From the NCBI GenBank assembly GCA_964106645.2, contig OZ067050.1: a stretch of DNA of 64,000 nt; one strand, written 5' to 3'. This stretch comes from Podarcis pityusensis. Taxonomy: Eukaryota. The position numbers and the translations under genes are program-made. Under the pieces are notes generated by a model, which was not told where the DNA came from, ran no database searches, and saw only the letters and a program-made list of their open reading frames with translations. Below are positions 31,967 through 57,977 of the stretch, one piece after another; the first letter of the stretch is position 1; each line of letters begins with the position of its first letter.

Positions 31967-32165
31967 TATTTTTCTTTTCCTTTTTAAAAAAGGGCTGAGG
32001 TTTTATTTATATTTTTTAATACCGCTCCACCCACAACCCTCGATTACATCAAAAATAAAGCCCAGTACGACCGCCCTGATACAAATCGGTGATTTGACTC
32101 CTCCCTCTTTCTTCACAGTTTGGCTTCTACCTGACGCGCCCATTCTGATTCTGGATGCGGCTTTG

Positions 32166-34360: not shown

Positions 34361-35240
34361 CTGTGCATTAGGTTCTCCTTAATCCTAGGAAATCAGTATG
34401 TGTTGAAAGGTTCTAGACTAGAGTCAGCCTAATTTCCTGGGGAGAATGAGCCATTTGCACATCAAAGGAGTGGGGCCTTGGCGGGTGTTAGAAAAGGCAG
34501 AGGCAATGAAAGCTTGGGAGGAGCATCGTGATGCAAGCTGACAGAAGTTGGGGGTCAGAAGGACATGACTTTTTGTCGCTGGGCTGCAAGGCTGCATCTG
34601 CGAGAAGAACAGAAACCTCTTGGAAAATGATGCTCTGAGCCGCCCCATCTGGACTCTGGTTGCGTAGATGTGTATATAAACCATGCACCATAAAGACACC
34701 ACAGTCTCTGCTGTGCCTCATTGTTCAAAAAGAAACACAGCGCTTACAACCCCTGGAATCTCTCACCACTTGGGGATAGAGTGTGTGTGTAACATTATTG
34801 TGATGGGACGATGAGCTGCTTGTGTGTAAAATCCTAGTCCCTCAGAGTTTGGTCAAGTTTGCAAACCTCTGTCTGTAACGGAGCCCCTTAAACATGGCTC
34901 CGTCAGTCGCTGGCAGATTCCGACAGTGGTTGCTTTCGGAATCGCTTCCAACATAAAAGCTCCTTAACGGAAACACGTCTTCTGGACTCTCTGCGTGACA
35001 GTTTCCGGCGAGGAGTGGGTGTCCCTACAGGAGGTCCTGAAACCTCCCCACTGTTTTCGCTGGAAGTGTCTCTGAGCCATCCCTCCAGCTCCCTTTCACT
35101 TCCCTTCCTTCCGATGGCAGTTCCCTGACATCCACCTCCCCTCCAGGGCCCCCTTCATCCCCTCTCGCCCCCTCCTCTACGGGCGGTGAGGAGGCAAAAC
35201 CCCGGAATGAACTTCCTTCATCTTCCGATGTCCCGAACAC

Positions 35241-36695
35241 TTATCTCCACCTGTTGCGGTTCCTGGTCTCGAAGTACTCCTCCTCCTCAGAGTCCATCTC
35301 CCCTTCCCCTTCCGATTCCGAGAATCCTTCCAACTCCTCCTCCTCATCGGTGGTCCCAAAGTATTCCCTCCGGAACCTCTCCACAGGCTGAGGTTTCCTT
35401 GGGAACCTTTGATGGAACGTTTCTATCAATACCTCGTCATTGATATCTTCTGCCATTACCCAAGTGTTTTCTGACTCCGGTTCTCCTTCCCACGCTACCA
35501 AATACTCCACCTGATCCCCCTTCCACCTGGCGTCGAGGATTTCTGCCACATGGCTGCTGCATTCCCTTTCTTCTATGACCGGTCCCCGAGTGGCCATCCC
35601 TTCTCGTCCCCCCTCATACGGTGACAGTAACGACCTGTGAAATACTGGGTGCAGTTTCATGTGGTTGGGTAACCGGAGCCTGAAAGCCACTGGGTTGACC
35701 TGTTGAATGACCTCAAAGGGACCCAATCTCCTGGGTCTTAATTTCTTACAACCTCCTTTGAACGGCAACCCTTGGGTTGACAGCCACACCCTATCTCCCA
35801 CCCTTATGGTTTCACCTTCCCTTCGGTTCTTGTCTGCCTGCCTCTTGTATTCTTCCTTCGCCCTTTCTAAGTTGAGTTGGAGCTGACGATGGATTGCTTC
35901 CATTTCTTCTACAAAATGCTCGGCTGCCAGGACACCCCATCTCTCCCCTTCTCCCCCTGGGAAAGCCCTGGGATGACACCCATAATTAGCCAAGAAGGGG
36001 CTCATCCCTGTGGACACATTCTCGGCATTGTTGTAGGCAAATTCCGCCAGCGCCAACTTTTCTACCCAGTCATTCTCTCTGTCATTGACATAACACCTCA
36101 GGTATTGCTGGAGGACCCCGTTTGCTCTTTCCGCCTGCCCGTTGGTTTCAGGGTGCCGGGCAGTCGAAAAGTTGACCTCCACCTGCAGTAAGCTCATGAG
36201 CTTCCTCCAGAACCTGGAAGTAAATTGTTTTCCTCGGTCTGAGACCACCCTCAATGGCACCCCGTGCAACCTAAAAATGTGTTCTACAAATAACTTCGCT
36301 GTCTCTTCCGCCGTGACTGCATGCGAGCAGGCTACAAAGTGGCACATCTTTGTTAGTAGGTCTACCACCACCATGATGGCTGTTTTCCCCTTGGACTTCG
36401 GCAGATCAGTCATAAAATCTATCGACACTGCCTCCCAAGGTCGTTCTGGGGTTGGTAAGGGTTCTAATAGCCCCGCCGGTGCCTGCCTCTCCCCTTTGGC
36501 TCGCTGGCATTGCTCACACCCTCTTACATACTCCCGTACATCTTCCCTCACCTTAGGCCACCAAAATTCCCTGGTGACCAACCACATGGTTTTGTGTTGT
36601 CCAAAATGCCCCGCCGTGGGGCTGTCGTGCAACTGCTTGAGTACCCTCCCCCTTAAGTCTCCTTCAGGGATATACAGTGCCCCTTTGTAATACAA
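35241..36695 (-). CDS. Gypsy integrase with chromodomain (pol remnant)
   Basis: HHCC zinc finger (HDSPTAGH...CEQC), DDE core (SIDF, SDRG, QAER), GPF module, chromodomain VAEILDARWKGDQVEYLVAWEGEPESENTW. No natural start of its own. Confidence 0.85.
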   Translation of the reverse strand: MYYKGALYIPEGDLRGRVLKQLHDSPTAGHFGQHKTMWLVTREFWWPKVREDVREYVRGCEQCQRAKGERQAPAGLLEPLPTPERPWEAVSIDFMTDLPKSKGKTAIMVVVDLLTKMCHFVACSHAVTAEETAKLFVEHIFRLHGVPLRVVSDRGKQFTSRFWRKLMSLLQVEVNFSTARHPETNGQAERANGVLQQYLRCYVNDRENDWVEKLALAEFAYNNAENVSTGMSPFLANYGCHPRAFPGGEGERWGVLAAEHFVEEMEAIHRQLQLNLERAKEEYKRQADKNRREGETIRVGDRVWLSTQGLPFKGGCKKLRPRRLGPFEVIQQVNPVAFRLRLPNHMKLHPVFHRSLLSPYEGGREGMATRGPVIEERECSSHVAEILDARWKGDQVEYLVAWEGEPESENTWVMAEDINDEVLIETFHQRFPRKPQPVERFRREYFGTTDEEEELEGFSESEGEGEMDSEEEEYFETRNRNRWR

Positions 36696-36784
36696 AGCTC
36701 CATTTCTTTCCTCGAAACCCCCTGGTTCCTCTCCCTCACCCCTAAGACCTCTGAGCTTATTCTGGGCGTATTCATCATTCTCTG

Positions 36785-37207
36785 TTTAATATCGCTGGAA
36801 AACATCAGATCCATGGCGCGAAAGAACTTCATCGTGTCCTTTAGGACGTCACTATTCGCTGCCATCAGGGGTCTAACCCAGTCTCTCGCCCCCTTTTCAA
36901 GATGCCCAATCACGAAAGCCACTCGTGATTCCTCGTCAGGGAATTCATCAAACTGCAGATTGAGGGCATATTGCATCTCTGTCCGAAAGCCATGATAGTC
37001 TTTGGGTTCCCCCCCAAACTTCTGCACCAATCCTGGTACCTTTCTGACGAGCTGGGTGTCTTTCCCCTTTTTGTCTGCATCCTGAGCCCTCCTCTCCTCA
37101 AGCCTCGCCGTCTGCAGCGCTAGCTGGACCTCCAACACCCGGTACCTTTCTTCCAGGCTTGGACCCGCTCCAGCTCCTGCTTCTCCGGTTCCGGCTGGGT
37201 TGCTCAT
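36785..37207 (-). CDS. Truncated Gypsy gag
   Basis: ATG 46 nt inside the 5' LTR; KFGGEPKDYHGF...FPDEESRVAFVIGHLEKGARDW resembles the Ty3/Gypsy capsid N-terminal domain; ends at the deletion junction. Confidence 0.8.
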
Positions 37208-40200
37208 GATGCCTTCTCCTGCACAAGCTGCTCACGGAGACTGTCGGAATGCTGTGATGGGACGATGAGCTGCTTGTGTGTAAAATCCTAGTCCCTCAGA
37301 GTTTGGTCAAGTTTGCAAACCTCTGTCTGTAACGGAGCCCCTTAAACATGGCTCCGTCAGTCGCTGGCAGATTCCGACAGTGGTTGCTTTCGGAATCGCT
37401 TCCAACATAAAAGCTCCTTAACGGAAACACGTCTTCTGGACTCTCTGCGTGACAGTTTCCGGCGAGGAGTGGGTGTCCCTACAGGAGGTCCTGAAACCTC
37501 CCCACTGTTTTCGCTGGAAGTGTCTCTGAGCCATCCCTCCAGCTCCCTTTCACTTCCCTTCCTTCCGATGGCAGTTCCCTGACAATTATGTCCAGCTTTT
37601 AATTTACCTTGAGGCCAGGAGTGCCAGCCTGGCCCCATGAGTGGCCAGGGCCGTGGGTGCCATGCAGCGTGCATGGCCCTGGCACTGAAGTTTGTGGGTG
37701 CCCAGCCCCTTCATGGGGAGTTTTGTGGGTGCTCAAGGCCCCAGGGAGTTGGCAGCTATGCGGGAGGCTTTTCATATGATGTTTTAGGACTTTTTAAATA
37801 TCGGAGCTGTATTTGATTTGGAAGTTTTATTTGTTGCACTGCTCAGACTTTTAAATACCACGGTTAAAAGAGACGATGGTTTTAACATGGTTCGCTGCTC
37901 TGAACTGTGCTTGTTCTCAAACAAATATGCCAGCAGATGCAAGTTCCAGTTAATACCTGTACTCATGACTGATAACCACACACACTTAGCATCTTTCTTT
38001 TTTCCTTCTGCTGTAACCTGTCAGGAAGATAGAAGTAGGTGTAAAGCATAGATGATGCTCACTCCAGTGAGGAAGGGAGCTGTTTCTGGCAGGGGAATTG
38101 AAAGTGACTAGTCTGTGGGGGAAGGCCCTTCACTCTACGCAGGCATTATGACTTTACCTCAGATGTGAAACTGACAAGGGCCTTCTGCACACTTGGCCTC
38201 CTGACTAGGGCCCAGTTAGATGCCTCCATCTTAGTTTTTGTTTTTTAAGTAAAGAAGCTGTGGGAAGCTGCCTGTTTGAACTGACTAATGGGAGGTTAGG
38301 GCTGCTTTGCATCTGGATTTTTCTGATCCAAAGCCATCCTTGAGTGAGTGGATTACAGGAGGGATTTAAAATAAATGATAATTGTGTGCTTCACAAATGA
38401 GGCAGTCCACATGGACTAAAATTATGTAGCTGCACCACTGCTCTCACCCCCTCTGACTCTCACTGGCAAAATGGGCCCACTGGCTCAAATCATGACGCCA
38501 GATCAGTGAGGATTGCCTTATGACCTGAAAATATGCCCCCTGGGGCACCTTGACTTCCACACGCACACCAACCCCCAACAGAGCAAGGGGTTGTATGTGA
38601 ATAAGAAGCACGTTCTGGCCACATTCACACTGAAAGCACTATGACGCCACTTTAAACAGTCATCATGGCTTCTTCCCCCGAAGCATCTTGGGAGCTGTAG
38701 TTTGTTCAGGATGCTGCTGAGAGTTGTTAGGAGAGCTCTGTTTCCCTCACAGGACTAAAATCCCTAGAGCGATTTAACAGATGATCCCTTTCACAGGGAA
38801 CTCTGGGGACTGTAACTGGGAGGGGAATGGGGGTCTCTTAACAACACTTAGCAGCCTTATCAAACTACAGCTCCCAGGATTCTCTGGGAGAAGCCATGAC
38901 AGTTTAAAGTGGTACCACAGAAATTTCAATGTCTCATGCGAATGTGGCCTCTATATGTTCTGGAAGCAGCCGCACCGAGCACTGGCCCTCAAGATATTTG
39001 GCTGGGCTAGAGGGCCTGGTCTTACCCTAGATTACCTGCATCTTTTCTCAACTATCTACTTCTTGCTTATATTAAGAAGCAGGCTTTTCAGATATAAACG
39101 CGCCATCACATCCTTCGAAACACACTAGATCCAGATTATCTCGCAAAACCTTTGCAGTTCCCATGCCCAGCCTTTCCTGTGGTTGGTCCTGTGGTGTCTT
39201 CTATGTTTATCTCAGCTCCTGCTGTACTCAAGCCATTCTCAGGTTGTCAAAGACCTCGCCTCCTCATGTTTCTTTTGTTTTTCTTGCCCCACAACATTTA
39301 AGGACAGGCTAACATGCCAACATTGAGCAGGAGAAAATCTTCCCTTCACACTTTCCCCATACCTGGATAAATTTCTGCTAAATCTCACCATTTTTTAGAC
39401 GGTTGCTAATGTCACAAGAAAACAGGGACAATCCCACCAATAATCCCTGCCCACACTGCTTACTCTTTCAAAGAAGTTTTTCAGAGTTTTTCAAGAAGTT
39501 TTAACTGGTTTAGATGCTTGGTTTTTAAAACTGATTTTAGAATAAGGAATTGCATTCTGTTATTGAATAAGTTTTGCATTTTAAAACTCATTTGAATCAC
39601 AGCACCAGTCACAAGTACAGGTAAAACGGGGTTTGGACCTGCTGCCCTCGATGCTAATACTATTTATTTAGGAACGTGCACCATTTTGTTCTAGAAAAAG
39701 ATACTACTACTACCTCGAATAATAATGTATGTGTCATATCAATTTTCTGGGCAACCAGTGGCTTTGGCGGGTGGGGGAAAATAGCTATTGAACAATGTAA
39801 GTTGCCAACATTTGGGGGGCCAGTGGGCATATTTGGAATTTTGAGAAAGTCTCCTTGGGCGCCAGACACACAATGGCTGCTGGGTTAGCATATCGCCAAA
39901 TGACTTTGGTGATGGGCCCATGAAATGCTCCTGCAACAGTCAGCCCATCAATGCAAGGAAAGGCACCTACACTAGCTACTGCCAGATTCACTCAGAGAGA
40001 AAAACTCTATGAAGGTTAGTCTAGTGCCATCATACACAACACACAACTGTTTATTGTTGTTTAGTCATGTCCGACTCTTCATGACCCCATGGACCAGAGC
40101 ATACAAAGATATTAGCCACAACCACAGTGATGGGGGCAGAGAGAGAGCAGGTGACAAAGATAAGGCCCAAGGCATTTTGCTGCCTGAAGCAGAGCCCAAG

Positions 40201-40309
40201 TACATGCAGCAACTATCTCAGACAGGGCCGGGGAGCCCATGCTTCTCCTTGAGTTGTTGGGCCGGGAGGCAGCTAGCTGTGGGACCACCCCTGAGAATGC
40301 CCTCTCCAT

Positions 40310-40646
40310 TGTTGTTGTTTAGTCATGTCCAACTCTTTGTGACCCCATGGACCAGAGCACGCCAGGCATTCCTGTCTTCTACTGCCTCCCACAGTTTGGT
40401 CAAACTCATGCTGGTAGCTTTGAGAACACTGTCCAACCATCTCGTCCTCTGTCGTCCCCTTCTCCTTGTGCCCTCCATCTTTCCCAACATCAGGGTCTTT
40501 TTCTCTTCTCATGAGGTGGCCAAAGTATTGGAGCCTCAGCTTCAGGATCTGTCCTTCCAGTGAGCACTCAGGGCTGATTTCCTTAAGAATGGAGAGGTTT
40601 GAAATTCTTGCAGTCTATGGGACTCTCAAGAGTCTCCTCCAGCACC
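40310..40646 (-). mobile_element. Bov-B LINE 3' fragment
   Basis: Same sequence as 24876-25230; 13-bp TSD ATGCCCTCTCCAT at 40297-40309 and 40647-40659. Confidence 0.88.
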
Positions 40647-43132
40647 ATGCCCTCTCCATAGCGGCTGCCGAATAACGGTGGCACCATTCTCTGGACTGGA
40701 TGTTAAGATGCTGGGAGGAGGACCTGGATAAAGCCCTCCCACCACCCGCAGTCCAGCGCCGATAAGGAGACAGGCAAGGGGAGATAAGCAGCCGAGGACG
40801 TCAACAAATGTTTGTCGCCTTGCAGATGTGCAGACGCTCAGAGAGGGACCTTGCTAGCCTAGTCTGGACGCAACTGCTCGACAAGACCATTGGCAGGTAT
40901 GGCGAAGAAGCCACCCCACTCGCCCCCAATGCACCCGCTTGGTCTCTGCCAGTGCTGCCCTTCCCTGATGGTTTTTGCTTTTCAAAAGGGTGGGGGCGGA
41001 AACAGGGTTGGGAATGGCGTTTTTCAGTGGGTAAGGCTTTGCTCTGTTCCGAGTCCCACCTTTTCGTCTCTTCTTTTTCTTTCCTGTGATAGAGGAAGGC
41101 AGGAATTTGAATTTTTAATTTGAATTTTTAGCTGTGTTTATGTGCGTGCATGCCCACAATTTGAACTCAGCTTCAAGCAGCAAAAAGTCTCAGGCCAGCA
41201 CTGCGTTCCCCGCAGGACAGCCTGTGGAGCCCTGGCAAGGGTCTTCTGCAATTTAGCAGCTGGGTGGCAGGTAGAAATTCAACAGGTGTAGTATGCTGCC
41301 TTCATGCCAGAGGAGGGGAGCTTGTACCCACTGCAACCATGAACACAGAAGCTCTGCCAGAAAGGATGTTTCAGCCACAGATAAATCTAATGGGGCTAAT
41401 AAAGTTATCCAGTCTTCCTCTCCCTGCTGCTCCCCAGCTGCCCTCATGCATTATGAAAGCTGAAATAGGCTCCTGTTTTCACCTGTGGGGGCCGGTCATT
41501 GCCTCTTAGCCTAACCTACCTAACAAGGATGTTGTGGGGATTAAATGACGAGGTGGGAAACCATGCACACCACATTGAGCTTGTAGAAAAGGTGGAATAT
41601 AGAATAATAATACTGATAATAGTACTAGGTCATAAAGAGATACATTCTGTTCTTTATGAAAAAAATTCATAACAAACCGAATTAATAGTAGAACAGAACT
41701 TTATCCTTTATGGCAGGATATAACTAATATATTAATATATAATATGAACAATAGGCCAAGGAGATAGACAGGTCACCGACAGTCAATGTTAGTTTTAGTT
41801 TGCAGCTATACATATACCAGCTATACATATACATTTACACATGCAAAATCCTCATAAATCTATGCCATCTTTTGTTTGCTTTCTGGGCCACGCAAATGAC
41901 AGATGCCCGGCTTTGCCTGGTGGCGGCGCCAGCCGTGAGTTGAAAATGGAGAGCTGACAGCTGTCTAGAAACGATAAGATTGCCACATGATGAGGAAGGC
42001 CTGTTGAAACATGGCAAGTCCAGCGTCTCAGCCGGATTCTGCACGCCTGGCCACATTCTAGGATTCACCACCTGCACCCTTTTAATATGTTGAGCTGTGG
42101 GTTGCGAATGCTAATTATATGTATTTAAAATATTTCACCCCTCTGGCACCTGGTGCAGCTGCTTCCCTGCATTTCCACAGACCAGGTTACAGCAGGGAAT
42201 CAAGCCCTCGGACCACCTTGATACCACCTAAATAGGGCCGTGTCCCCAAGCGCTGTAGAAATCCTCGGTCCAGATCCTCGGTCAGTTGCTGCGTGGGGCA
42301 AGTGATCTCTCTGGAAGCCAGTGGAGACAGGCATCGCCATCCTTGTTGATGCATGAAAGGGAAAGCTCATCTCCACCCAAACTCTGTCACATGGGCAGAG
42401 GCCATAACGAAACCCTTGCAACTGGAAAAACATGATGGTGGGGTTGAACTGTAGAGATGGAGAGGAATTCATTCATAACCAATTAGGTAGAAATTCAAAC
42501 GCATCAGATTTGCGTTTTCCAAACCAATGAACCAAACGCCAACTACCCTTTCAAACTAGCACTTCTCTGATTTAAAAGCCTATGAGTTGAGGTAGCTGCT
42601 GGCTGCCCTCTTTTCTCAATGCATGCTCTTGGATATTTCTTTTTCCCCATTTATTTATTTATTATTAATGTTGCCATACATATATGAAATCTTTACATAA
42701 TGATACATATACTTTATATTCATAAATTCACACTTTCACATTTCATTACGTACCAACATTTATCCATTTCTTATTTCTTGCCCTGTGTCTTCCCTCCACC
42801 CTGCGTGACTTCCTTGTTATTATTTTGTAACTTTATTATTGATTATAATTTTGTATCTTAATAATTAAACATTCAATCTTATATATCTGATTAGCTTAAC
42901 TTAACTTTGTGAAATCAGTCTATACATATCAATAAATTCTTGTTGGAGCATCTTTTGGTCATGTATTCTTCTACACATTTTCATTCCTGATTGAGATTTT
43001 GATTAGATTGCATTCTAATTGTTGCTGTCATTTTTGCTAATTCAACCCAATTAGCTCTTGGATATTTCTTTTACGTTTTGTCCTCAGGTTGCTGTTCCTT
43101 GTTGCTCCACTGCCTTCTGGAGTTCTGACACT

Positions 43133-44422
43133 ATGGAAACAAGATCTCTTCTCAGGCAAATAATGGGCTACAGCATGCCTTTTGGCTTCCTTATCCTTTT
43201 GGCCGTGGCCACAAATGGTGAGGAGAATGCAACCACACAACCTCCAGACAAATCTTTTTTTTTTTTTTTAAATAATTTTTATTAACAGGCCAATCACATC
43301 ACATTATCCATATCACATTAATTCCAAATTATACAGCCAAATTTTACATTTTGTTGGGGGTACCCATACATCAAGCTCCGCACGAGTCCAAAACAGCATC
43401 ACTTATCTTACTGCTTTAATTAGACAGTTCTGTCCAGTTTGATCCGGATAGTCCTTTATTACTTCCTTTCTCTTCTTGTTGTTATCATAAATTCCTTTCT
43501 TTGCGATCTCCGATGATTTTCACAAGCACGTTAAAAGCTCCACCCCCCCTTCATTCCAAACATACCGTCTCCTTGTGGTAATTCATCAGAAGATTTACTT
43601 ATCCGTCCGTCACTCCTGGTCGCAGAGATCCATTAATCAGCAGTCTTATCAGTCGAGCTTTACTTGATGTATGTGCTTTCAGCTTCATTTCCAATCGTAT
43701 GTTTCCAATTATAATTCCAAGCTGAAGCAACCAGCACGCGCTGATTGGAATCGGCGTCAGGAAGATCTGACTTCACCGGTGGCCTGTGCCAAGTGTTCGG
43801 CACCCCCATCTCTCGTTTCAGGGGGTGCATTGTGAACACCGCTGGCAGGACAGTGCCCCCCCACATCCTGAGGGGGATTAGGAAGGCTGCATACTTCCCA
43901 TAGCAGCCCCTTAGTACCTCGTATGGGTCAGAGAGATGTTATTGTCGGCCATCTTCCAATGCCCCACCTGGTGGCCCCCCAGACTAATCTTTGCCTCATC
44001 CCACTGTTGCAGCTAACAAATCGTCTTCTCAAAATGCAACCGCTTCGGAGACAATTCATACGTCCAGAGAAAGTAGAAAGAACAAAACCTCTGGAGAAAT
44101 GTATCCTGCTGCCTTGAAGCCTCTTTCCAAAGAATTGACTGCAGCTGCAAAATGGCCTCTGAATGCAACCATCAGCACCACTGAGATGTCACCCGGCAAA
44201 AAACCAAGCGCAAAACCAGGACAGGCTAAGGGAGAAGGAGAAATGAGGGCATCGCCTAAGTCAGATGAGAGGAATTCAACCCAAACCCATGGTAACAGGG
44301 GCTGTGGGGCTGGCTGCCGACCATCAACTACCACACCAGCTGCAAGAGCTGGATCTGGTGGTCTGACAGCAAACCTTGGAATCATCATGGCAGTGGTCCT
44401 CTCTCTCCTGCTCTGCTTCTGA
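43133..44422 (+). CDS. SPN/CD43-derived short mucin-like paralogue, predicted GPI-anchored, interrupted by a retroelement (possible intron 43218-44012)
   Basis: Acceptor, 5' UTR and signal peptide METRSLLRQIMGYSMPFGFLILLAVA nearly identical to SPN at 56735-56885. Frame resumes at 43991 with an S/T-rich, N-glycosylation-site-rich region and ends GSGGLTANLGIIMAVVLSLLLCF-stop. AATAAA at 44580. Could be a pseudogene if unspliced. Confidence 0.7.
43258..43978 (-). mobile_element. About 720-bp polyadenylated retroelement (L1-dependent, non-autonomous)
   Basis: Poly(T) run and minus-strand AATAAA at the left end; 14-bp TSD CCAGAC(A/T)AATCTTT at 43244-43257 and 43979-43992; minus-strand 5' end GGGG...AAGATGGCCG. 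Confidence 0.85.
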
Positions 44423-47400
44423 CCCTTGTCTGACCCCCTTGGTTGACGTGGGGCTTCCAAACCATGAAGTCCACTCACTCAGGGATGTGGTAGGATTGTA
44501 GTAATGCTGAAAATACACCCTGGGACATCTCCTCCGCTTCCAAACACCTAAGACCCAAATATAGTGTGTGTTTGTGTGAAATAAATTCTATGTTTTTTGA
44601 AAGAATCGCTCTGAGATCAGCCCTTTAAGCTCTCAGACTGTGTTACAGTGGTGAGACTGTACTACTCCTCTATTACCTTCCTCTCACCTCAAGAGTTTCG
44701 TATGTACACCAGCGCATCCTTGAAGACCTAGATTAACCCGTCTAACTTTGCAGTTTAACCACCCAGCCGTTCCTGTGTTGGTCTTGCCTTATCGACTCCT
44801 TTTGTTGTTCAACCGTTGCAGTTCATGGGCCCTTATCAGGCTGCCCCAGACAGGCATCCCTTCTATGACTTTCGTTTCTTCGTGCCCTGCGGCCTGAAAC
44901 AAAACACTGCCATGCCAGAACTGAGCAGGTGAAAAGCTTCCCTTTGTGCTTATCTCGGTGCCTGGAGAAGCCTTTTGCTCTGCCACCCCTGCTGAGGCCC
45001 CAAATGAGCCGGACATCTCATTTGGAATCAACCATGGGGAGGGGCATTTTTTTCGAGACTGCAACAGGGGAGAAAAGGCTTAAATTTGCCTTCCCAACAC
45101 ACCATGCTGACAGGGTCCGCCATGAGGCCCAAGTGGCGTAGCAGTTCATCGTAAGATTGTAGCGTTGGAAGGGACCCCGTGGGCCATGTAGTCTGACCCA
45201 CTGCGATGCATGCATCTCAACACATCGTCTCCCATCCAATTTGAAACCATACTGGGCCCTGCTTAGCTTTGCAAATGTGCTAGCAGTTTTCTTGCTGCAC
45301 CACTAGGAGTGGGGTGTTTGTTCAGGGGCTGGGCACACAAGGCCCTGGGTCCAATTCCTTGAATCTCCATGTTTTGGGCCACAATTCAGGGGTAGCTGAG
45401 CAGGGAGTCCTATGGGGGAGCATAGTGGTTTGTCTAGGGTTTCCACCAGGGGTGCTTCCAAGCCTGGAGATGCTGGGAATTGAACCGGCAAAGCAGAGTG
45501 TTTGCTCTGCCACTGAGCTATGGCCTTTCCATGGTTCAGCTCCCTCTTCCAGCTCAAATACATAATGGTGGCGCAGTGTTGAAGACCCTGGAGAGCCCAT
45601 ACTGCACAGAGGGTACAAGACTAGGCGAGGTGGGCCAGGGGTTCAGTGTGTGCTTATTTTAAAATAGCCTTGAATTCTACTTCTGAAAGTGAAGCATCTA
45701 TTTATATTGTCTTTATATTGTCTTCCCAAGAGTCGCTTGGGAAGAAACCAAGTCTTTAGTGTCATCAGCTCAGTCCTGGGAATACTCTGCCAACAGAGAT
45801 TCAACAGGCACCTTCTGTTTCAGTTTTTGAAAGCTTGCCAAAAACTTTTCTATTCAGTCAGGCTTATGCAGGCAATGAAGAATGCATCTTTTCAAAATAG
45901 TTGGCTGATTTCTGATATGTGTGTGATTATTTATATGATTGTTGAAAATGACTGATTTTTTTAAAATGAATAGTGGAATATATAGATAGTAAATACAAAT
46001 ATATAAATATTTTATGATCAATCAAATGAATAAATATTATTTGGGGAGTGTAGAGGATATTGGGGAAGGATTTTCCTGATCATTTGAGTTTGCTGTGTAA
46101 TCATGGGATTGCATTTACTGTTCAAAGGATTTTGACATGTTGTACTTCCTGGTTTCCTCAGCTGTACTATAAAATAAATAAATCAGTATTGTAGATGCTA
46201 TTTTTTTTAAAAAAAATTCTTTCTTACCTGCACCGATGATAGTCATTGTTTGGATGGGAGGCTTTTATCCATTTCCACAGTCACACAATCAATCAATCAA
46301 TCAATCAATCAATAGCTGAACTGGGATTCACACAGTCACAAAAACAAATTAACTGAAAAAGCCTCAAATAAAAAAAACGCAAAATAAATAGCAAAAACAA
46401 AAGCACCAAATATAAGCTCCAAATATCACCTTAGAACACTGCAGTCGGAAATGGAAGGCTTGAATTACAATTGGGGGGGACGCAAAGTAGCAGCGCAACA
46501 GGAAACACACAGGGGGACACAAAACGGAGCACATTTGGCTTCCAAAAAAAAGTTCGGAAACCAGAACACCTACTTCAGGTTTTGCAGTGTTTGGGTTCCA
46601 AGTTCTTCTTTAACTAAGCTGTTCGAAAACCAAGGTACCACTGTATTAGACAAACTAGAACCAGGCTGCAGACATGGGGCAGGCCAGAAAGGGACCCAGT
46701 CTAATTACAAACTTAATTCCACTTATCTGGGAGTAAACTCCCTAGAGTGCAATGCACTTTCCTTATTAGAAGACCAGGTTAGTCTGGTAGTCCTACATGC
46801 ACAACACACAAGATTTGCATACATCCGCCACAACACTGGTGAGTACAGAGACTGTGGAGGTAACAAAAACAAAAACAAAAACCAAGCAGTGGTTTTGCTG
46901 CTTGAAATGGGCTTGTAGCACTTGGGCCAACCATTTAAAACGGGGATGGGGATGCTGTGCTTCTCCCAGTGCTGTTGGACTCCAACTCCCATCAGCTAGT
47001 CTGATGCTCTAACCACTACACCACACTGACCCTCTCCATTGTGGTTGCCCAAAGATGGTGGAAGTGGAACCACCGAGATATTCTCAAGTCTGGATGTTCT
47101 AGAGGAAGACTTAGAGAAGTACCACACCCACACACATACCCCACCCAGTCCCACAGCAGTAAGGGGAAGATGTGCAAAAGGAGATAAGCGCTTGCCAGCT
47201 TCAGGGAGCCTGTGGTTGCCATACTGATATCTAGATGACTAAAAGGGGACGTTACAGCCCTAGTCTGAGCAGGATGAAAACCACCATCCACTTGCACGGC
47301 CAGTCTGCTTGCCTGGCAGCCCATCCATCTTACTTTCCTTGGCCGTTCTGTGGTTGTGCCTTCCTCCGCTGTGGGTGCAGGAAGCAGAGCTGAGCAGGGG

Positions 47401-50400
47401 CTGATCGTGCTTGCTTACTGGTGAGGCTAGTGCACTCTGCATGAGCTCTGAGGCATCCTTTCTTCACGTCGGCCGCCCTAGCATTTTGTGTGGGAGGGTG
47501 GATAACTTTGGTGGTCCTTGGTTCCAAGAGCCTCTCGGTCTCCCCACATGTCCCAACGTGGGCAGGCCCCTCTCACACCCGCGATGCATTGCCAAGCTGA
47601 CTACACCACTTCCTCTCGCTGTGTGCATTTAACGGTTGCTTCTTCTTTTTCAGTATTTCTCCACCGCCACCTCCTCCTCGGTTTCATTCACTCCTTCCTG
47701 CCCGGCCAAACAGAATATTGGTGAGGCGAAGGCAAAGCTGAGGCCTGCCCCACAAGAACCTTCCCTCAACAGGTGGGACCAGCGTTGCGTGAAGCCTTCT
47801 TCCTAAGCAAAAGGTAGAGGGGAGCGGGATGGTGGGGCATTGGTCATTTGGGATAGAGCAAAATTGCAAAGTATCGTGTGGAAATGGTTGTGGGGAAGGT
47901 GGGGTGGCAGCTGCGGAAATGAGAGGTGCATTGTTAAAGTGCGTTTGTTGTATCGTCCACCTGGCATCCCTCGAAGGAGTTCTGTTGGGCATCTATTTTA
48001 TCTTCACAGAAACCTGTGAGGTAGGTTAGCGACTAGCCGAGGCGGGATTTGAACCTGGCTCTAAATCAAACACTTTGTCTGCTAAGTAGTCTGCCCCAAG
48101 CTGGGATTAAGAGCTGAAAGAGCTGGAAGAACAGTGGAAAAGAGGCTGCTATATGCAGAAAATCCAGCATCTCGACCAAGTGGCAAAATAGAGAAATCTG
48201 CTTCAGGCAGGACCATGATAGAGAGATGGGGAAAGGCAGGAATTTGAATTTTTGAAGTGCCGGCCCTAACAGAAGGGAGGTGGTACTTCTGGGGCTCAGT
48301 TTCAGGCGGCAAAATAACTTGAGTTGGCACAGGAGTCTCCACAGGACTAAATCAGGTTTCTGGTCCTGATTTCATCCTTATAATCTAGGCAGCTATATAG
48401 TTTTATAGTCTCCAGCCACATTTTCCTTCCTGGATGCTGGAAGCATTTCTTAAACTCTTCGCTGCTCATGAATAACACATGCCGAAACGTGGAAAGTCAA
48501 TGAGCACCCTTTTTCTATAGTGATAAGTCACAGATTCCATGCTGCATGGATGAGTGAAAGTGCTGTACAGCCCTCAAGTTTCCCCTACACCCACCTTCGA
48601 TTACGATATCTCACAGTAGATTCAGAAGAGATGCAGTGGAGGAGACACAACGTGCACACGCTTGGCATCTCCTGTCTGAGCTTCCTACGCAGGAACTGAC
48701 AGAGGATGGTCCATTGTGGTGAGATGTGGGGAATCCCCCTCCCAAAAACTGCAGGGAAAGCACTCAGAGGACGAATTTCTTTCAGGGCAGCCTCTTATAG
48801 CACTTCTCTGGCCCCTCAAGGGATGGGATGAGGTAGAAATTCAGATTTTTTTGCATTCTAATGAGAAACTTCCTAATCCACGCTTCTCAAGCCAATGCAC
48901 AATTAATTATCCTTTGGAATTTGCACCTCTCCAGATTTTGCAGTGTAGATCTCCAAACCGAGAGGGTGTGCAAAAATGCATATGTTAGTGCTTCTCCAAT
49001 TTTCCACCTCCCACATGAATTGTTGAAGGTCTTGATGATTTTTTCCCCTGCCTGCTGTAGCAATTGCAATGCGCCGTGCTAGACACTGCATGATTTTGAA
49101 ATGCATTTTTGTTGCTGCTTTTATTTGTTATACTGTATTTGATTGCACTTTAAATTCCATAGAATTTGATACGACTTCAGAGTGCAAGTGTCCTTTGCAG
49201 AGATGGCACAGAACACCTGAATGAAGCTTATGGGCCACTGGTAATCCGCAAACACAATATGGGAACCCTGTGTTAGGCACAAAAATGCATACGTTAGGAA
49301 AGATAATGTAGAAAAATCCATTGCTTTATAGGAAATCGCTTACACAAAAAAATGTGCCCAATAGTCAAAACTGCATACCTTTAAAAAATATGGGGGGTTT
49401 TTGGAGAGAATTTTGCACTCAAAAAACTGAGGAATTTTCATGAGGATTTTTTAAAAAACAGATTGCAATTTGCTGTGGAAATGCAAAGATGTTAGTTTAA
49501 GACTGGGAAACTGAGGAACTGAGAGAAACTGAAATGGGCAGATATATTCATCCTTTATCCTCAGGGTGGAGGATAAGCTGCTCCAAGGAATATTATACCA
49601 GGATCTTCCCCTGACTTGGAGCCTGCCCTGTAGAGAGACAACATGAAATGGGTGTCCAAATGGCACTGCAATATTTTTTTAGAGGGTTGGGCCTAGCAGG
49701 GATGAGGCAATGCTTCGGGCAGAGAACTGCCGTGGGCTGGAACAACCCTGATCATTCAGCTTTCTTTCTTTCTTTCTTACTTATATTTTGTTGCTTCTAT
49801 TTCTTTTAATTATGGCAGTATGAGAGAAACACTAGAAAGAGAAGCAGCAGGCTGTGGCAGGAAGAGGGAGCGGCCCTTTCCATCTACCCGCCTTACACAA
49901 CTGCCACCCGGCCCCTCCTCTCCCCAGGTTCTCTCAGCGGTCAGCCATTTTGTGGGGCGCACACAGTGAGGCCCCTTCCATTGGCCTCCTTTGACCCATT
50001 TTTGTTTTACGTTCCTTCCATGAGACACATTGTGGTTTCCTGCTGAAAGGCAGGATAGAAATATAATAAACGTACACAACAGAACAGTGTTGCAGCACAC
50101 AAGCAGCATTTCCACACAATTATCTCATTAAGAGAATGTCTCAACGTCAGACTAGGATACCTAAAGGGCCGTCTCCTTTTGCCTGGCAGCTTGTTAAGAT
50201 GAAGGAAACGTTCGAGGGTGGAGGGTGGCAATATATCAGGAGCCTCTGAGTTTACAGTAATTCTCTAATGGCCATAATTACTGTGGTGCCAAGGTGGTTG
50301 GCAGGGATATTTGGACTGGGCACATGAGGGAAATTATTCAGCTGCAAGTGGCAGCAGGTAGGGCCTTGGGCAGTGCCAGTTTAAGGTTTCACAGGAGGCT

Positions 50401-54363: not shown

Positions 54364-56804
54364 CAAAGGGTCAAGCACCCAACAGTTAAGCTGGCTGTCG
54401 GGTGCTTGGGAACCTCACACAAGAGATTTTGACAGGTGGGAGGAACAACCTGCCTGTCAGTCACATGAAACCCCAGTGGTGTTACATGATTGACAAATGG
54501 GCTATTCTGCCCACCTGTCGACACTGGGCTGTGTTTCTCCACCTAACTGCTTAACTGGCCATATGTCATGAAACACACAATTAACATTTCTCTTCTCAGC
54601 CCCTCCCCATCATTCTAATTTTTCAGCTATGCCTATAAATTATATGTGCCATCATTTGTTAACTTTTTTTGAGTGATGCATTTCCTCCTTTTCCGGTGAT
54701 GCATCGGTTGCTGCCCTCCTGCAGATGTATGTGGATTTCAGACGTGAGAAATGTGTCTGTCTGGTAGGAAGTGCCACTCCTTGTGGTAACCCTTCCTAGA
54801 ACAGTTGTAGGCAGTTCTGCCCTCAACCAAGCCCCAGACACAAAATAGTGAGTGCTCCTGTCCACCATATTCCTTAGGAATTCCTCTTGATTGGAGCCCC
54901 ATTTTTTTAAAGTTCTCACGCACCTGACTTGAAAATACTGCTGGTTCATTTGTTGTCTGGTTTAAAAGAGAATTCACAGATGCCAAGATCCATGTTTGGC
55001 ACAAGTACTCTTTGGTAAGAGAACCCAAGCAGAGATTTAAAATTTTTAAAAATACACAGCAAAGTAAAGCGTGGAAATATAGGCTGGTGGATCTTTAAAA
55101 TATTCCTTTCTAAGATGCTTCCTAAGTCCTCCTCTTCCCTTAGCATAGAAAGAGACTACATGTTTGGCAAGTTAAAAATGGTTTGCATACAAAATCTTCA
55201 AAGATCAGGTTCATGTGCTTTCTCATATAGCAGTCAGAAAAAGACAGGCAGTAAAACTAAAGTTCTAAAGTGGTGAATGGTTATTTGCCTAGAAACAAAA
55301 GGATGGCTTGCAGAAAGCCATGAAGCTAAGCTGGAGCAACCAAGCTTAGCCTCCTTACTTGCAGGAGTGCAAATGGTGTAATGGGAAGAATGAAAGCTTG
55401 ATAACCCTTTCTCCCAAGATAAGAGAGAGTGACCTAAGCCTGTCAGGACAGCTTACTCTGTGGTCTTAACCCCTCCATGCATTAATTAGAGTTAAGCACG
55501 TTGGTTATATGGGACTGAGGATCCCACAAATACATCCTTTTATTCATCATATGCTTCTGTCCTTCTAGATTTGCTTACAACTCTCTTTCTTTCTAGCTAT
55601 CTATATTTTCCTCTCTTATCCAGAGCCGTCTTTCTCATTGGACTTAGTGGTTCGTTGTGCCAGGGTGCTGGCCTCTCAGGGGTGCCCTGGTGAGTGGGGG
55701 AGCTGCGCGGCTTTACCAGCAGCCTCCCCTTTCCCTGCACACCCGCCAGCTGCGCCCCGCCAACTATATGGTTGGCGGGCATGCAGCTTCCTTCCCAAGC
55801 CTCCACAGGAGGAGAGCGATCCCCACAGAGGCTTAGGATGGGAGCTGCACACACAGCTTCCCTCCCAAGCCTCTGCGTCTGCTAAAGATGGCCCTGCTCC
55901 CGGTCGCTGTCCTCCTCCTGCTTCCTGGCAAAAGGAGGTGCGCAGCCTTCCTGGGCTGCCTTCTCGGGCGGCCTGACACCAGAGAACATGTCCTCCAGCA
56001 CGTTTTCCTGCTTGATCGCCACCACCACGCCAGGGATCGGGGCGGTGGGGGAGGCAGAGGACATTTTCCACCGCCCCCTCCCTTGTTTTGGAGTTGCTGG
56101 GGGGCGGCGGCAGAGGGATCTTTGCACACGGCGCTGGATATGCTTAAGATGGCCCTACTCTTATCCAATGTATATCATGTTCATTTCAAAGAGCTGGGGA
56201 AGGTTGATAGCACAGTGGTTAGAGCATCTGCTTTGAGTGCAGAATGTCCCGGGTTTAATCCCCAGGGCTGGGGAAAAGATCCCTGTCCGAAATCCCGAAG
56301 AGCCATTACCAGTGAGTGGGGACAGCACTGAGTTAGATAGACCAAGTGGTTTGACTCTGTATAAGACAGCTTCCTTTTATGTTACTAGCGAACATCTTTT
56401 ACATTAAAGCAATACTGTACAAATCAATTCACCAAATAAAACTAGTTTGCAAGACTAGAGACAGGGTGCGGTCAGCTCCAGACCTTGTTAAACGCTGGAA
56501 AGGAATTTTGCTGTGGGGTGTCCTGAGCCAAACAAGACACAATGCCCTAGGAGACATCCATGATGTGTAGCTCCACATGATCTGAGCATGAAGTCCCCAA
56601 CCCATCAGAAGAATTCACGGGTCCCTAATTTAAAAAACCCAGGTGTTTAGATATTCTCTTACTCCTCTCTCTTTTCAGTGCAATCTTCCAGGGGGGAAAA
56701 TGTTTTTAAAAAACTTTTCACATTTTGTTCTCAGGTTGCTGTTCCGTGTTGCTCCACTACATATCACTAGCCAAGCAGGCCCTGCCCTCTGGAGTTCTGC
56801 CGCC

Positions 56805-57977
56805 ATGGAAACGCGATCCCTTCTCAGGCAAATAATTGGCTACGGCATGCCCTTTGGCGTCCTTATTCTTTTGACCGTGGCTGCACATGTTGATGGGCAA
56901 GTTTCTGCTACTTCAGACACACGGCCTGTGGGGACCACCATCTTTCCCCCCACGTCAACTTTCACAACTGAAAGGGTGGACACAGAGCTTGCAACCTCAC
57001 CCTCTCCAGCCAAGCCTTCAGCTCTCCCCTTGTCTCAGTCCACTGCTGCAGCTAAAAAACTGTCTCTAAAAACAGCCACTACAGAGATTATTCTCCAAGA
57101 GAGCAGTACAGATGAAGATGAAACTATCACCAACAATACATCAGGCCCCCATCCCTCTACCGGCCCTGCGATCAGCCTTACCACAGAAACAGCTGCTGTG
57201 GGACAAAAATTTGCGATCAGACCTACCACAGAAGCAGCTGTTGTGGGACAAAAAACTGGTACAACCAGTGGCGTGGCAAACCCTCTCAATACAACAACAG
57301 CCCCTCTCGAGACTACTGTTGGGAGTACATCTGGCATCAAACCAAGGTCAAATTCAAAACAGACTACCAAGGGTGAAGCACAGCCAAGTCCGAAGCCAGA
57401 ACAAGATGTGGTAGATGACACCAAAACAATGGACAACCGCACCCATTGGCCTGCTCAGTGGCCCTCAACCACGACAGCTGTCCCCCAAACAACAAGCGCT
57501 GTCCTTGGCCCAAGAGCAAGTTCTGAGAACAACAGCCAGACTGGAATAATTGTGGCCGCTGTCCTCTGTGCCCTTCTGTTCCTGATCCTCTTGATTGCCA
57601 TCCTCCTTTGCTGGCGAAGGCGCCGCTCTGGCTCAACCAGCTTCAACGAGGGGTGGGCAGGCCAGGTGGCGCTGCCAGACGACTCGGCCTTGGATCGGGA
57701 TGTGGAGCAAGGGGCAGTGCCTGCAAAGGAAGAGGAGACCAAGCGCAACACACTCATCACGTTCTCCGGCAAGCGTCAGTCAAGGGTGCCTTCGGTAGCC
57801 ATGGAGGAAATAGGCGAGAAAGGAGAGAGCGGGGAGAACCAGAAACTGCTTTGTGGAGATGCTGGCGGAGGCTCCAGCCCAGAGGCTTCTGGGAAAGCAA
57901 ATGGTAGACTCTCAGAATCCACCATGCAGTCCTCTCAAGAGATCGTGTTCCCCCCACCCCCAGCTAACCAGGAGTAG
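56805..57977 (+). CDS. SPN: Leukosialin (sialophorin, CD43), 390 aa
   Basis: Single coding exon after acceptor 56733-56734, Kozak GCCGCCATGG, signal peptide, S/T/P mucin ectodomain, TM, tail WRRRRSG...WAGQVALP...RNTLITFSGKRQSR..SVAMEE matching recalled CD43 (WAGPAQVP...RPTLTTFFGRRKSR..SLAMEE). Synteny with C16orf54 and ZG16. Confidence 0.92.
   Translation: METRSLLRQIIGYGMPFGVLILLTVAAHVDGQVSATSDTRPVGTTIFPPTSTFTTERVDTELATSPSPAKPSALPLSQSTAAAKKLSLKTATTEIILQESSTDEDETITNNTSGPHPSTGPAISLTTETAAVGQKFAIRPTTEAAVVGQKTGTTSGVANPLNTTTAPLETTVGSTSGIKPRSNSKQTTKGEAQPSPKPEQDVVDDTKTMDNRTHWPAQWPSTTTAVPQTTSAVLGPRASSENNSQTGIIVAAVLCALLFLILLIAILLCWRRRRSGSTSFNEGWAGQVALPDDSALDRDVEQGAVPAKEEETKRNTLITFSGKRQSRVPSVAMEEIGEKGESGENQKLLCGDAGGGSSPEASGKANGRLSESTMQSSQEIVFPPPPANQE

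What the first reader, a model, noticed from the sequence alone, without database searches (positions are those of the whole stretch)
43088..44585. Tandem CD43 duplicate apparently converted to a tail-less, GPI-type mucin
Seen: 13.7 kb upstream of SPN is a copy sharing its acceptor, 5' UTR and signal peptide. Removing the insertion and one TSD restores one frame of about 184 aa with several N-x-S/T sites, ending in small residues (GSGG), a spacer and a hydrophobic tail (LGIIMAVVLSLLLCF) that stops where SPN is still mid-TM. It has its own AATAAA at 44580. Known: this is the layout of a GPI-attachment signal, as in CD24/CD52-type small mucins. Inference: a signalling-null, GPI-linked CD43 relative paired with the full-length receptor.
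Basis: partly seen in the sequence, partly recalled or inferred. Interest (0 to 1): 0.8.

Follow-up and report, generated by a model that had tools for sequence, protein, structure and literature searches.

The report
Retroposon-broken short CD43 paralogue in lizards
An old, fast-evolving tandem copy of the leukocyte mucin gene CD43 has lost the signalling tail and ends in a GPI-anchor-like signal; it is intact in two related lizards and transcribed in a third, but here a mobile-element insertion splits it and it is probably dead.

Summary
The window comes from a Podarcis wall lizard about 1.2-1.6% diverged from P. lilfordi. It holds a true leukosialin (SPN/CD43) gene and, 13.7 kb upstream, a diverged copy. 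The copy shares SPN's splice acceptor, 5' UTR and signal peptide. It stays collinear with SPN as far as mid-transmembrane and has no cytoplasmic tail.

A 721-bp poly(A)-type retroposon with a 14-bp target-site duplication splits codon 41 from codon 42. Removing it restores 184 codons.

New evidence:
- The same insertion is in P. lilfordi.
- The site is empty and the ORF intact in P. raffonei (183 aa, same stop) and in Lacerta agilis (181 aa).
- The site is also empty in a third Podarcis ("organism C"), where RNA-like libraries from two studies cover the locus.
- All ectodomain indels are in frame.
- omega is about 1.2-1.6, the same as in the ectodomain of genuine SPN.
- In Lacerta a 1-nt insertion rewrites the last residues and moves the stop four codons.
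- No database annotates the protein.

Verdict: this is a real, unannotated lacertid SPN paralogue with a tail-less, GPI-type layout (rule-based check only). In this genome it is most likely a young pseudogene. The mechanism has known precedents in CEACAM and FCGR3B.

The parts
43069..43087 (+). Conserved intron end and splice acceptor (AG at 43086-43087) shared with SPN exon 2
   Evidence: identical ttttgt(c/t)ctcag|GTTGCTGTTCC in the copy (three species) and in SPN (four species).
43088..43132 (+). 5' UTR part of the copy's coding exon; carries a 25-nt deletion relative to SPN and to the Lacerta copy
43133..43255 (+). CDS piece 1, codons 1-41 (signal peptide and start of ectodomain). In the genome as it stands it runs into the T-run and stops at 43283-43285
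   Evidence: tblastn to SPN E 1.5e-9; h-region FGFLILLAVA.
43244..43257 (.). Left copy of the target-site duplication (CCAGACAAATCTTT)
   Evidence: Empty-site sequence in L005 and L008.
43258..43978 (-). Non-LTR retroposon insertion in antisense orientation (its poly(A) tail reads as the T-run at the left end). No ORF. High-copy repeat
   Evidence: Word depth is thousands in the DNA runs against 12-15 on unique flanks. Present in L003 and X3; absent in L005, L008 and X16.
43979..43992 (.). Right copy of the target-site duplication (CCAGACTAATCTTT, one mismatch)
43991..44419 (+). CDS piece 2, 143 codons: ectodomain with five sequons, then the C-terminal signal
   Evidence: Collinear with the SPN ectodomain up to mid-TM (26% identity over 212 aa, E 4.5e-9).
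44348..44419 (+). Last 24 uncharged residues: small-residue cluster (AGSGG), short spacer and 15-residue hydrophobic end. This is the GPI-type signal, derived from the first half of the ancestral transmembrane segment
44420..44422 (+). TGA stop. Conserved in P. lilfordi and P. raffonei. The aligned triplet is CGT in Lacerta
44423..46200 (+). Downstream transcribed stretch (probable long 3' UTR). Includes the conserved AATAAA at 44580-44585 and further AATAAA motifs at about 46030 and 46176
   Evidence: RNA-like contigs lie on 44374-45387, 45358-45529 and 45500-46145..
43218..44012 (+). Candidate cryptic intron (795 nt, in frame; donor G|GTGAGG, acceptor ttgcag|CT) that would remove the insertion. 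Untested
   Evidence: base 43222 is G in the window and P. lilfordi but T in P. raffonei and Lacerta. No RNA data exist for this species.
56733..57977 (+). Genuine SPN/leukosialin coding exon (CDS 56805-57977, 390 aa)
   Evidence: 98% to P. lilfordi leukosialin; orthologues named leukosialin across squamates.
47651..47814 (+). Upstream SPN exon used in the P. lilfordi and Lacerta gene models. It lies downstream of the copy
40826..40896 (+). Exon of a long P. lilfordi SPN isoform, upstream of the copy. Possible shared first or upstream exon

Best explanation
The stretch is the single coding exon of an old tandem paralogue of SPN (CD43). The duplication predates the Lacerta-Podarcis split.

The paralogue kept SPN's acceptor, 5' UTR, signal peptide and the first half of the transmembrane segment, and it has no cytoplasmic tail. 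In species where it is uninterrupted it encodes a 181-183-aa secretory-pathway glycoprotein. After removal of the two signals the mature chain would be about 130 residues, basic, with 3-6 N-glycan sites and about 22% Ser+Thr. Its C-terminus has the layout that the GPI transamidase recognises: small residues, a short spacer, and a 15-19-residue hydrophobic end with nothing after it.

The product would therefore be a lipid-anchored CD43-like surface mucin. [quoted passage not shown] It evolves as fast as the SPN ectodomain.

In the lineage of this window and P. lilfordi, an L1-type retroposon landed between codons 41 and 42. The reading frame now ends after 50 residues, so here the gene is most likely a young unitary pseudogene.

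Shown: homology, insertion and empty sites, intact ORFs in two other species, in-frame indels, transcription in a relative.
Inferred: GPI anchoring, surface mucin function, loss of function here.
For: - Paralogy and collinearity with SPN up to mid-TM.
- SPN identity of the downstream gene.
- Duplication older than the Lacerta-Podarcis split, with no concerted evolution: copies cluster by paralogue, 93% within copy A against 82-86% between paralogues.
- Intact orthologues: P. raffonei ATG 19845 to TGA 20394 in L005 (183 aa, same stop, AATAAA kept). Lacerta agilis 3711-4256 in L008 (181 aa).
- Frame maintenance: the ectodomain indels between raffonei and Lacerta are +12, -21 and -9 nt, and the window has a private +3. 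In neutral flanks only 21 of 73 indels are multiples of 3. P(no stop after 63 substitutions) is 0.25, and the joint chance of an open frame is about 0.016.
- dN 0.146 exceeds the local non-coding divergence of 0.06-0.09 (P 4e-7 to 0.005). This mirrors the genuine SPN ectodomain (omega 1.2-2.1).
- Transcription: runs X13 and X17 (two studies, organism C) cover 42.7-46.1 kb. Their repeat-to-unique depth ratios are about 3-27, against 400 or more in DNA runs. They have zero depth on 47.2-48.4 kb, which the DNA runs do cover. In X13 depth steps from 7-8 upstream of the acceptor to 21-42 downstream.
- Insertion shared with P. lilfordi and with run X3; empty in X16, L005 and L008.
- GPI-type layout passes a rule-based check in all three orthologues, and full-length SPN fails it.
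- Precedent: a stop codon in a TM exon converts CEACAM1 paralogues to GPI anchorage (PMC5856374).
Against: - No dedicated GPI predictor or experiment was available. The 24 uncharged terminal residues could also act as a tail-less membrane span. In horse CEACAMs, stops in the TM exon did not give GPI predictions.
- omega is 1.2-1.6 overall and 3.7 over the last 22 aligned codons. Nothing at the sequence level separates it from neutral drift.
- The Lacerta C-terminus is frameshifted and its stop has moved.
- No annotation pipeline calls a protein here. The word search and the 1.84-billion-representative search both returned nothing, and the fetched locus tables for P. raffonei (L005) and Lacerta (L008) list no called gene at the copy.
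- The RNA label of X13 and X17 is a guess by the tool. Contigs cannot show strand, splicing or ends. Transcription continues past the AATAAA at 44580 and is also seen, more weakly, upstream of the acceptor.
- No RNA run is available for the window's own species, so loss of function here is inferred only from the broken frame.
Confidence: 0.5

Rival explanations
1. The gene is real in lacertids and dead here, but its product is not GPI-linked. The C-terminal uncharged stretch acts as a short tail-less transmembrane anchor, or it fails to anchor and the mucin is secreted or retained in the ER.
For: - 24 uncharged residues end the protein. In Podarcis 19 of them (LTAN..LLLCF) could form a helix.
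- Reading Lacerta in the Podarcis frame gives a sense codon (CGT) at the Podarcis stop, and both genera share a TGA eight codons further on. The ancestor may therefore have had a hydrophobic span plus an 8-residue tail.
- Horse CEACAM paralogues with stops in the TM exon were predicted as TM proteins, not GPI-anchored (PMC5856374).
Against: - The strictly hydrophobic run is only 15 residues with no flanking basic residue. That is short for a plasma-membrane span.
- A cluster of small residues (AGSGG in Podarcis, CGS/SAA in Lacerta) sits 6-10 residues upstream, as in GPI signals.
- The tolerance of the tail to a frameshift that keeps it hydrophobic fits a signal that is cleaved off.
Confidence: 0.2
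2. The copy has been a non-coding relic for a long time. It is a transcribed pseudogene or lncRNA locus whose open frame in P. raffonei and Lacerta is luck. The retroposon and the Lacerta frameshift are just two of its random lesions.
For: - omega is about 1.2-1.6 and coding divergence is at or above the flanking rate.
- Two of four lineages carry a lesion.
- It is unannotated as a protein everywhere searched.
- RNA-like coverage is continuous over 3.4 kb, including upstream of the acceptor and past the poly(A) signal.
Against: - The chance of an open frame across the Lacerta-Podarcis divergence alone is about 0.016. The duplication is several times older, and only two short stretches still match SPN by blastn.
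- All three ectodomain indels plus the window's private +3 are in frame.
- The one frameshift sits in the last 11 codons and leaves a hydrophobic end.
- The genuine SPN ectodomain also has omega above 1, so omega cannot separate the two readings.
- Depth rises 3-6 fold at the conserved acceptor.
Confidence: 0.15
3. The gene still works in this species. The retroposon is removed as part of a new in-frame intron (43218-44012, 795 nt), giving a 164-aa protein that lacks 20 ectodomain residues but keeps both signals.
For: - The donor G|GTGAGG and the acceptor ttgcag|CT are in frame.
- Base 43222 at donor position +5 is G only in the two species that carry the insertion and T in P. raffonei and Lacerta. 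G at +5 is the consensus; this comes from my own knowledge of splice-site consensus, not from a tool.
- After the insertion both pieces stayed open in the window and in P. lilfordi.
Against: - No RNA run is available for either species.
- The window and P. lilfordi differ by only about 1.2-1.6%, so open pieces are expected anyway.
- The donor and acceptor are ordinary coding sequence that merely resembles splice sites.
- The P. lilfordi annotation has no such model.
Confidence: 0.1

Closest known systems
Leukosialin / CD43 (SPN), the neighbouring parent gene
   Same: It shares the splice acceptor, 5' UTR and signal peptide (about 85% nt). It has a single coding exon. Its Ser/Thr-rich glycosylated ectodomain is collinear with SPN's, and it keeps the first half of the transmembrane segment.
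   Different: It has no cytoplasmic tail, so it lacks the basic juxtamembrane ERM-binding stretch and the conserved C-terminal region. The ectodomain is half as long, basic rather than acidic, and only 26% identical. The protein ends inside the former TM.
Primate GPI-anchored CEACAMs (CEA, CEACAM6/7/8) derived from CEACAM1 paralogues
   Same: In both, a tandem paralogue of a signalling type I immune receptor is made tail-less by a stop inside the TM-coding sequence, and the remaining half-TM serves as the GPI signal (PMC5856374).
   Different: The protein family is different (Ig-domain adhesion molecules against a mucin). GPI anchorage of CEACAMs is shown experimentally; here it is only inferred.
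FCGR3A / FCGR3B pair
   Same: Both are tandem duplicates in which one copy is a transmembrane signalling receptor and the other a GPI-linked, signalling-poor form (reviews found: PMC6786274, PMC11659932; the mechanism is from my own knowledge).
   Different: FCGR3B is a recent, highly similar duplicate with its own cell-type expression. The lizard copy is ancient and highly diverged.
Engineered CD43-GPI (ectodomain-only CD43)
   Same: Both are a CD43-type ectodomain on a lipid anchor without a cytoplasmic domain. In mouse T cells the engineered form was not excluded from the synapse and did not restore CD43's negative regulation (PMC2211903). That is the behaviour expected for the lizard protein.
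   Different: It is an artificial construct with the full mouse ectodomain. The natural copy has a shorter, diverged ectodomain.
CD24 / CD52-type small GPI mucins
   Same: Both have a signal peptide, a short glycosylated peptide and a C-terminal GPI signal. A CD24 cluster appears among weak language-model neighbours (score 0.84), which is a lead only.
   Different: There is no sequence homology. The mature chain would be about 130 residues, against about 12-35 in CD52 and CD24 (my own knowledge).

Membership tests
SPN / CD43 (leukosialin) gene family | Homologous N-terminal signal peptide and 5' exon architecture (coding exon entered through a conserved acceptor) | tested here: met
   83-86% nt identity, identical acceptor; E 1.5e-9.
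SPN / CD43 (leukosialin) gene family | Ser/Thr/Pro-rich mucin-type ectodomain collinear with SPN | tested here: met
   (212-aa collinear alignment, 26% identity, E 4.5e-9). (S+T 22%, S+T+P 30%, against 24% and 31% in SPN).
SPN / CD43 (leukosialin) gene family | Complete transmembrane segment followed by a basic juxtamembrane motif | tested here: not met
   the stop falls where SPN is mid-TM. No basic stretch follows.
SPN / CD43 (leukosialin) gene family | Conserved cytoplasmic tail of about 120 aa | tested here: not met
   tblastn of the SPN tail against 38000-47600 finds nothing better than E 0.07, and none of those hits is downstream of the copy in the right frame and order.
GPI-anchored proteins (C-terminal attachment signal) | N-terminal ER signal peptide | tested here: met
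   (h-region FGFLILLAVA, mean hydropathy 2.9), homologous to the SPN signal peptide. SignalP was not available.
GPI-anchored proteins (C-terminal attachment signal) | Small omega and omega+2 residues, a spacer of about 5-10 residues, and a C-terminal hydrophobic stretch of 10-20 residues with no charged tail | tested here: met
   a permissive rule-based scan is passed by the window piece, P. raffonei and Lacerta, and failed by full-length SPN. It is not a trained predictor.
GPI-anchored proteins (C-terminal attachment signal) | Positive call by a trained predictor (NetGPI, PredGPI, big-PI), or biochemical proof (PI-PLC release) | not testable with these tools
Unitary pseudogene (in this species) | Disabling lesion in an otherwise orthologous coding sequence | tested here: met
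   the retroposon lies between codons 41 and 42, and the frame ends at 43283-43285. Orthologues without it.
Unitary pseudogene (in this species) | No functional transcript or protein in this species | not testable with these tools
   no RNA holder for organisms A or B.
L1-type (poly(A), target-primed) retroposon insertion | Poly(A) tail, flanking target-site duplication, empty site in relatives, high copy number | tested here: met
   T-run, 14-bp TSD; empty sites; repeat depth. The element family was not identified.

The most novel reading that the evidence does not exclude
Lacertid lizards carry a previously unrecognised, positively selected, GPI-linked 'decoy' version of CD43. It presents a CD43-like glycan coat without any signalling capacity and is expressed independently of SPN. 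The Balearic Podarcis either lost it recently or rescued it by turning the retroposon-bearing segment of the coding exon into a new in-frame intron, helped by a lineage-specific T-to-G change at donor position +5.
Probability: 0.12. Interest if true: 0.65.

Novelty: new member of a known kind. Interest (0 to 1): 0.42.

Why it matters
CD43 is generally treated as a single-copy gene, and I found no paper describing a natural tail-less or GPI-type paralogue. A conserved lizard paralogue that keeps only the ectodomain would be a natural counterpart of the engineered CD43-GPI used to separate barrier from signalling functions. It would also be another example of the receptor-to-GPI conversion seen in CEACAM and FCGR3 families.

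For annotation, it points to an ORF of 181-183 aa that the fetched gene tables for P. raffonei and Lacerta do not call. It also dates a lineage-specific gene loss in the Balearic wall lizards.

For this window itself the result is ordinary: a retroposon-disrupted gene copy.

Tried and rejected
- Pfam on SPN and on both pieces found no family for the copy, and only sub-threshold hits for SPN.
- The word-index protein search with the 143-aa piece gave no hit. The exhaustive search of 1.84 billion representatives also gave none.
- A duplicate of SPN's upstream exon or promoter near the copy was not found.
- Remnants of the SPN cytoplasmic tail downstream of the copy were not found. A weak MAFFT match of 44452-44475 to SPN's 'GWAGQ' region is not convincing.
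- P. muralis: loci L001 and L004 leave a 2,965-bp gap exactly where the copy should be.
- Zootoca: loci L002 and L006 leave an 8.2-kb gap.
- Rhineura: there is no second copy within 10 kb upstream of SPN. This says nothing about greater distances.
- ESM Atlas features gave only weak neighbours (0.87 or less), among them a CD24 cluster at 0.84. I treat these as a lead only.
- Earlier scan notes held nothing for this place or these words.
- The joined 184-aa reconstruction of the window's copy and the 164-aa cryptic-intron model were not built or sent to any search tool. The pieces were searched separately by reference, and the naturally uninterrupted P. raffonei and Lacerta ORFs were used instead.
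- Read laying could not deliver contig letters, so the ORF of organism C could be judged only from gap counts: -3 or -6 nt in the coding part, none in 44116-44403.
- Gene conversion as the reason for the well-kept 5' end was rejected, because sequences cluster by paralogue, not by species.


Full report
**What the window is.** The downstream gene (CDS 56805-57977, 390 aa) is leukosialin/CD43. It is 98% identical to P. lilfordi leukosialin and finds proteins named leukosialin across squamates. The whole window is collinear with the P. lilfordi assembly at 98.4-98.8% identity (L003). It therefore comes from a Podarcis very close to P. lilfordi. Upstream lie a Ser/Thr kinase and a C16orf54 homologue.

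**Checking the observation.**
- Window 43069-43221 matches SPN 56716-56893 (E 1.7e-33). This covers the acceptor, the 5' UTR (with a 25-nt gap) and the signal peptide.
- The copy's frame opens at ATG 43133 and runs to 43255.
- A 721-nt element follows. It starts with a T-run and is flanked by a 14-bp target-site duplication (43244-43257 and 43979-43992, one mismatch).
- The frame resumes at 43991 and runs 143 codons to TGA at 44420.
- The offset of 735 nt is a multiple of three, so the restored frame is 41 + 143 = 184 codons. It carries six sequons.
- The protein ends in AGSGG-LTAN-LGIIMAVVLSLLLCF. In the alignment SPN is still in the middle of its transmembrane segment at that point.
- AATAAA is at 44580.
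- At protein level the copy is collinear with SPN from the signal peptide to mid-TM (E 1.5e-9 and 4.5e-9). No trace of the cytoplasmic tail follows.

**Getting the orthologues.** Pfam, the word-index search and the exhaustive representative search gave nothing for the copy. No annotation in those collections contains this protein.

I reached the orthologous DNA by walking from neighbouring genes.
- The longest P. lilfordi SPN isoform (P0018) gave L003, which contains the copy with the same insertion.
- The C16orf54 homologue of P. raffonei gave L005.
- Lacerta agilis SPN isoform X1 gave L008.
- The loci for P. muralis and Zootoca stop short of the copy.
- Rhineura has no copy within 10 kb upstream of SPN.

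**What the orthologues show.**
- In P. raffonei the site is empty and the ORF is whole: 183 aa, the same ..LLLCF stop, and a conserved AATAAA.
- In Lacerta agilis the ORF is also whole (181 aa). It differs from P. raffonei by in-frame indels of +12, -21 and -9 nt.
- The Lacerta copy has a single extra T inside the hydrophobic tail. This rewrites the last 11 residues to PLSPALLPSLV and moves the stop four codons further on. The codon aligned with the Podarcis TGA is CGT in Lacerta.
- The stop is therefore conserved within Podarcis but not between genera. Both genera still end in an uncharged hydrophobic stretch with small residues 6-10 positions upstream.
- In the 5' region, sequences group by paralogue and not by species: 93% between Podarcis and Lacerta copies, against 82-86% between copy and SPN. 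The duplication therefore predates the Lacerta-Podarcis split and has not been homogenised by gene conversion since.

**Is it a gene or a relic?** Nei-Gojobori counts for copy A are:

| Comparison | Sd | Nd | omega |
|---|---|---|---|
| Window vs P. raffonei | 5 | 24 | 1.6 |
| P. raffonei vs Lacerta | 13 | 50 | 1.24 |

On its own this looks neutral. However, the undisputed SPN ectodomain has omega 1.2-2.1 in the same species pairs. SPN's constraint sits in the TM and tail (0.3-0.46), which is exactly the part the copy lacks. Omega therefore cannot decide.

Frame survival is more informative.
- With the observed 63 substitutions, a random walk keeps the frame free of stops in 25% of trials.
- Neutral flanks carry 7.7 indels per kb, and 71% of them are not multiples of three. 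About 2.8 frameshifts are therefore expected in the 510 nt before the tail, and none is seen.
- The joint chance is about 0.016 for this split alone. The duplication is several times older.
- dN (0.146) exceeds the non-coding divergence around it (0.06-0.09; P 4e-7 to 0.005). This fits diversifying selection, as in SPN.

I conclude that the copy was a coding gene for most of lacertid history (about 0.8).

**Transcription.** No listed holder is on record as RNA. Six small runs of a third Podarcis (organism C, about 3.5% diverged) are guessed by the tool to be RNA, and they hold the stretch as fully as deep DNA runs of the same organism do. I laid two of them (X13 and X17, from different studies) together with DNA runs of organisms B and C on 42500-48400.
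- The DNA contig of organism C runs from 43243 directly to 43979, which is the empty site.
- Contigs of organism B bridge the junction between element and flank, which is the filled site.
- X13 and X17 behave as RNA. The ratio of depth on the repeats to depth on unique sequence is about 3-27, against 400 or more in the DNA runs. They have no contig at all on 47.2-48.4 kb, which the DNA runs cover evenly.
- Both cover the copy and its surroundings from about 42.7 to 46.15 kb.
- In X13 the depth rises from 7-8 just upstream of the acceptor to 21-42 within and after the exon.
- Coverage does not drop at the AATAAA of 44580. It continues to a cluster of AATAAA motifs at 46.03-46.18 kb.
- Gap counts in organism C are -3 or -6 nt in the coding part and none in 44116-44403, which again preserves the frame.

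There are limits. Contigs show neither strand nor splice junctions nor ends. The putative SPN upstream exon (47651-47814) is silent in both runs, so co-expression with SPN is not shown.

**The state in this genome.** The insertion has a poly(A) tail, a target-site duplication, no ORF and a very high copy number. It is an L1-type retroposition shared by the window's species and P. lilfordi only. As the DNA stands, translation ends after 50 residues. The simplest reading is a recent gene loss in the Balearic lineage.

One alternative cannot be excluded. The sequence G|GTGAGG at 43217/43218 and ttgcag|CT at 44012/44013 would define an in-frame 795-nt intron that removes the element. Donor position +5 (base 43222) is G only in the two species that carry the insertion. 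No RNA data exist for either species, so I give this about 0.1.

**Mechanism.** In species with the intact gene the product would enter the ER through the SPN-type signal peptide and be N- and O-glycosylated. It would most likely receive a GPI anchor at the small-residue cluster, with the half-TM cleaved off. This route is documented for primate CEACAM1 paralogues, where a stop in the TM exon makes the residual TM a GPI signal. In the horse, similar stops did not give GPI predictions, which is the main caveat (PMC5856374).

An engineered CD43 ectodomain on a GPI anchor was not excluded from the immune synapse and did not restore CD43's regulatory function (PMC2211903). The natural copy should therefore be signalling-null. 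Whether it serves as a glycan coat, a ligand or a pathogen decoy is open.

The joined reconstruction of the window's broken copy and the spliced cryptic-intron model were not assembled or sent to any search. The pieces were searched by reference, and the natural intact orthologues were used for whole-ORF work.

**Verdict.** This is an unannotated, ancient, fast-evolving SPN paralogue with a tail-less, GPI-type layout. That makes it a new member of a known kind of receptor/GPI paralogue pair. In this particular genome it is most probably a young pseudogene.

Noticed in passing
window 34799-37584: A 2.8-kb Ty3/Gypsy-type retroelement piece on the minus strand, with an open 484-aa integrase-containing ORF (35241-36695) and a gag-like ORF (36653-37207). 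It is absent from P. lilfordi, P. muralis, P. raffonei and Lacerta at this site, so the insertion is private to the window's species.
   Followed up: partly
window 32094-32687 (+): Main exon of the C16orf54 homologue (Pfam DUF4689), 98% identical to the P. raffonei protein. A Ser/Thr kinase gene lies further upstream. The gene order is kinase, C16orf54, SPN-like copy, SPN.
   Followed up: partly
window 40826-40896 (+): An exon (acceptor ttgcag|ATG, donor CAG|GTATGG) is used as the first coding exon of the longest P. lilfordi SPN isoform. The SPN-like copy therefore lies inside an intron of that model. The exon could equally be the copy's own upstream exon.
   Followed up: partly
window 57150-57260 (SPN ectodomain): A 15-residue tandem repeat (TTEAAVVGQKFAISP-like) varies from 2 to 4 copies among lacertid SPN proteins. 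The SPN ectodomain has omega 1.2-2.1, while its TM and tail have 0.3-0.46.
   Followed up: partly
window 44145-44279: One contig of RNA-like run X13 skips 135 nt (45 codons, in frame) with non-canonical ends (CT..AA) and only 29 letters on the shorter side. It could be an allele, a minor isoform or an assembly artefact.
   Followed up: no
window 44024-44032: The window has a private in-frame 3-nt insertion (an extra Ser in NKSSSQ) relative to P. lilfordi and P. raffonei. It arose after the retroposon insertion.
   Followed up: partly
window 42500-43060 and 45060-45450, 46050-47030: Further high-copy repeats flank the copy, with word depth of hundreds to tens of thousands in the DNA runs. They include a (CAAT)n microsatellite at about 46290-46315.
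   Followed up: no
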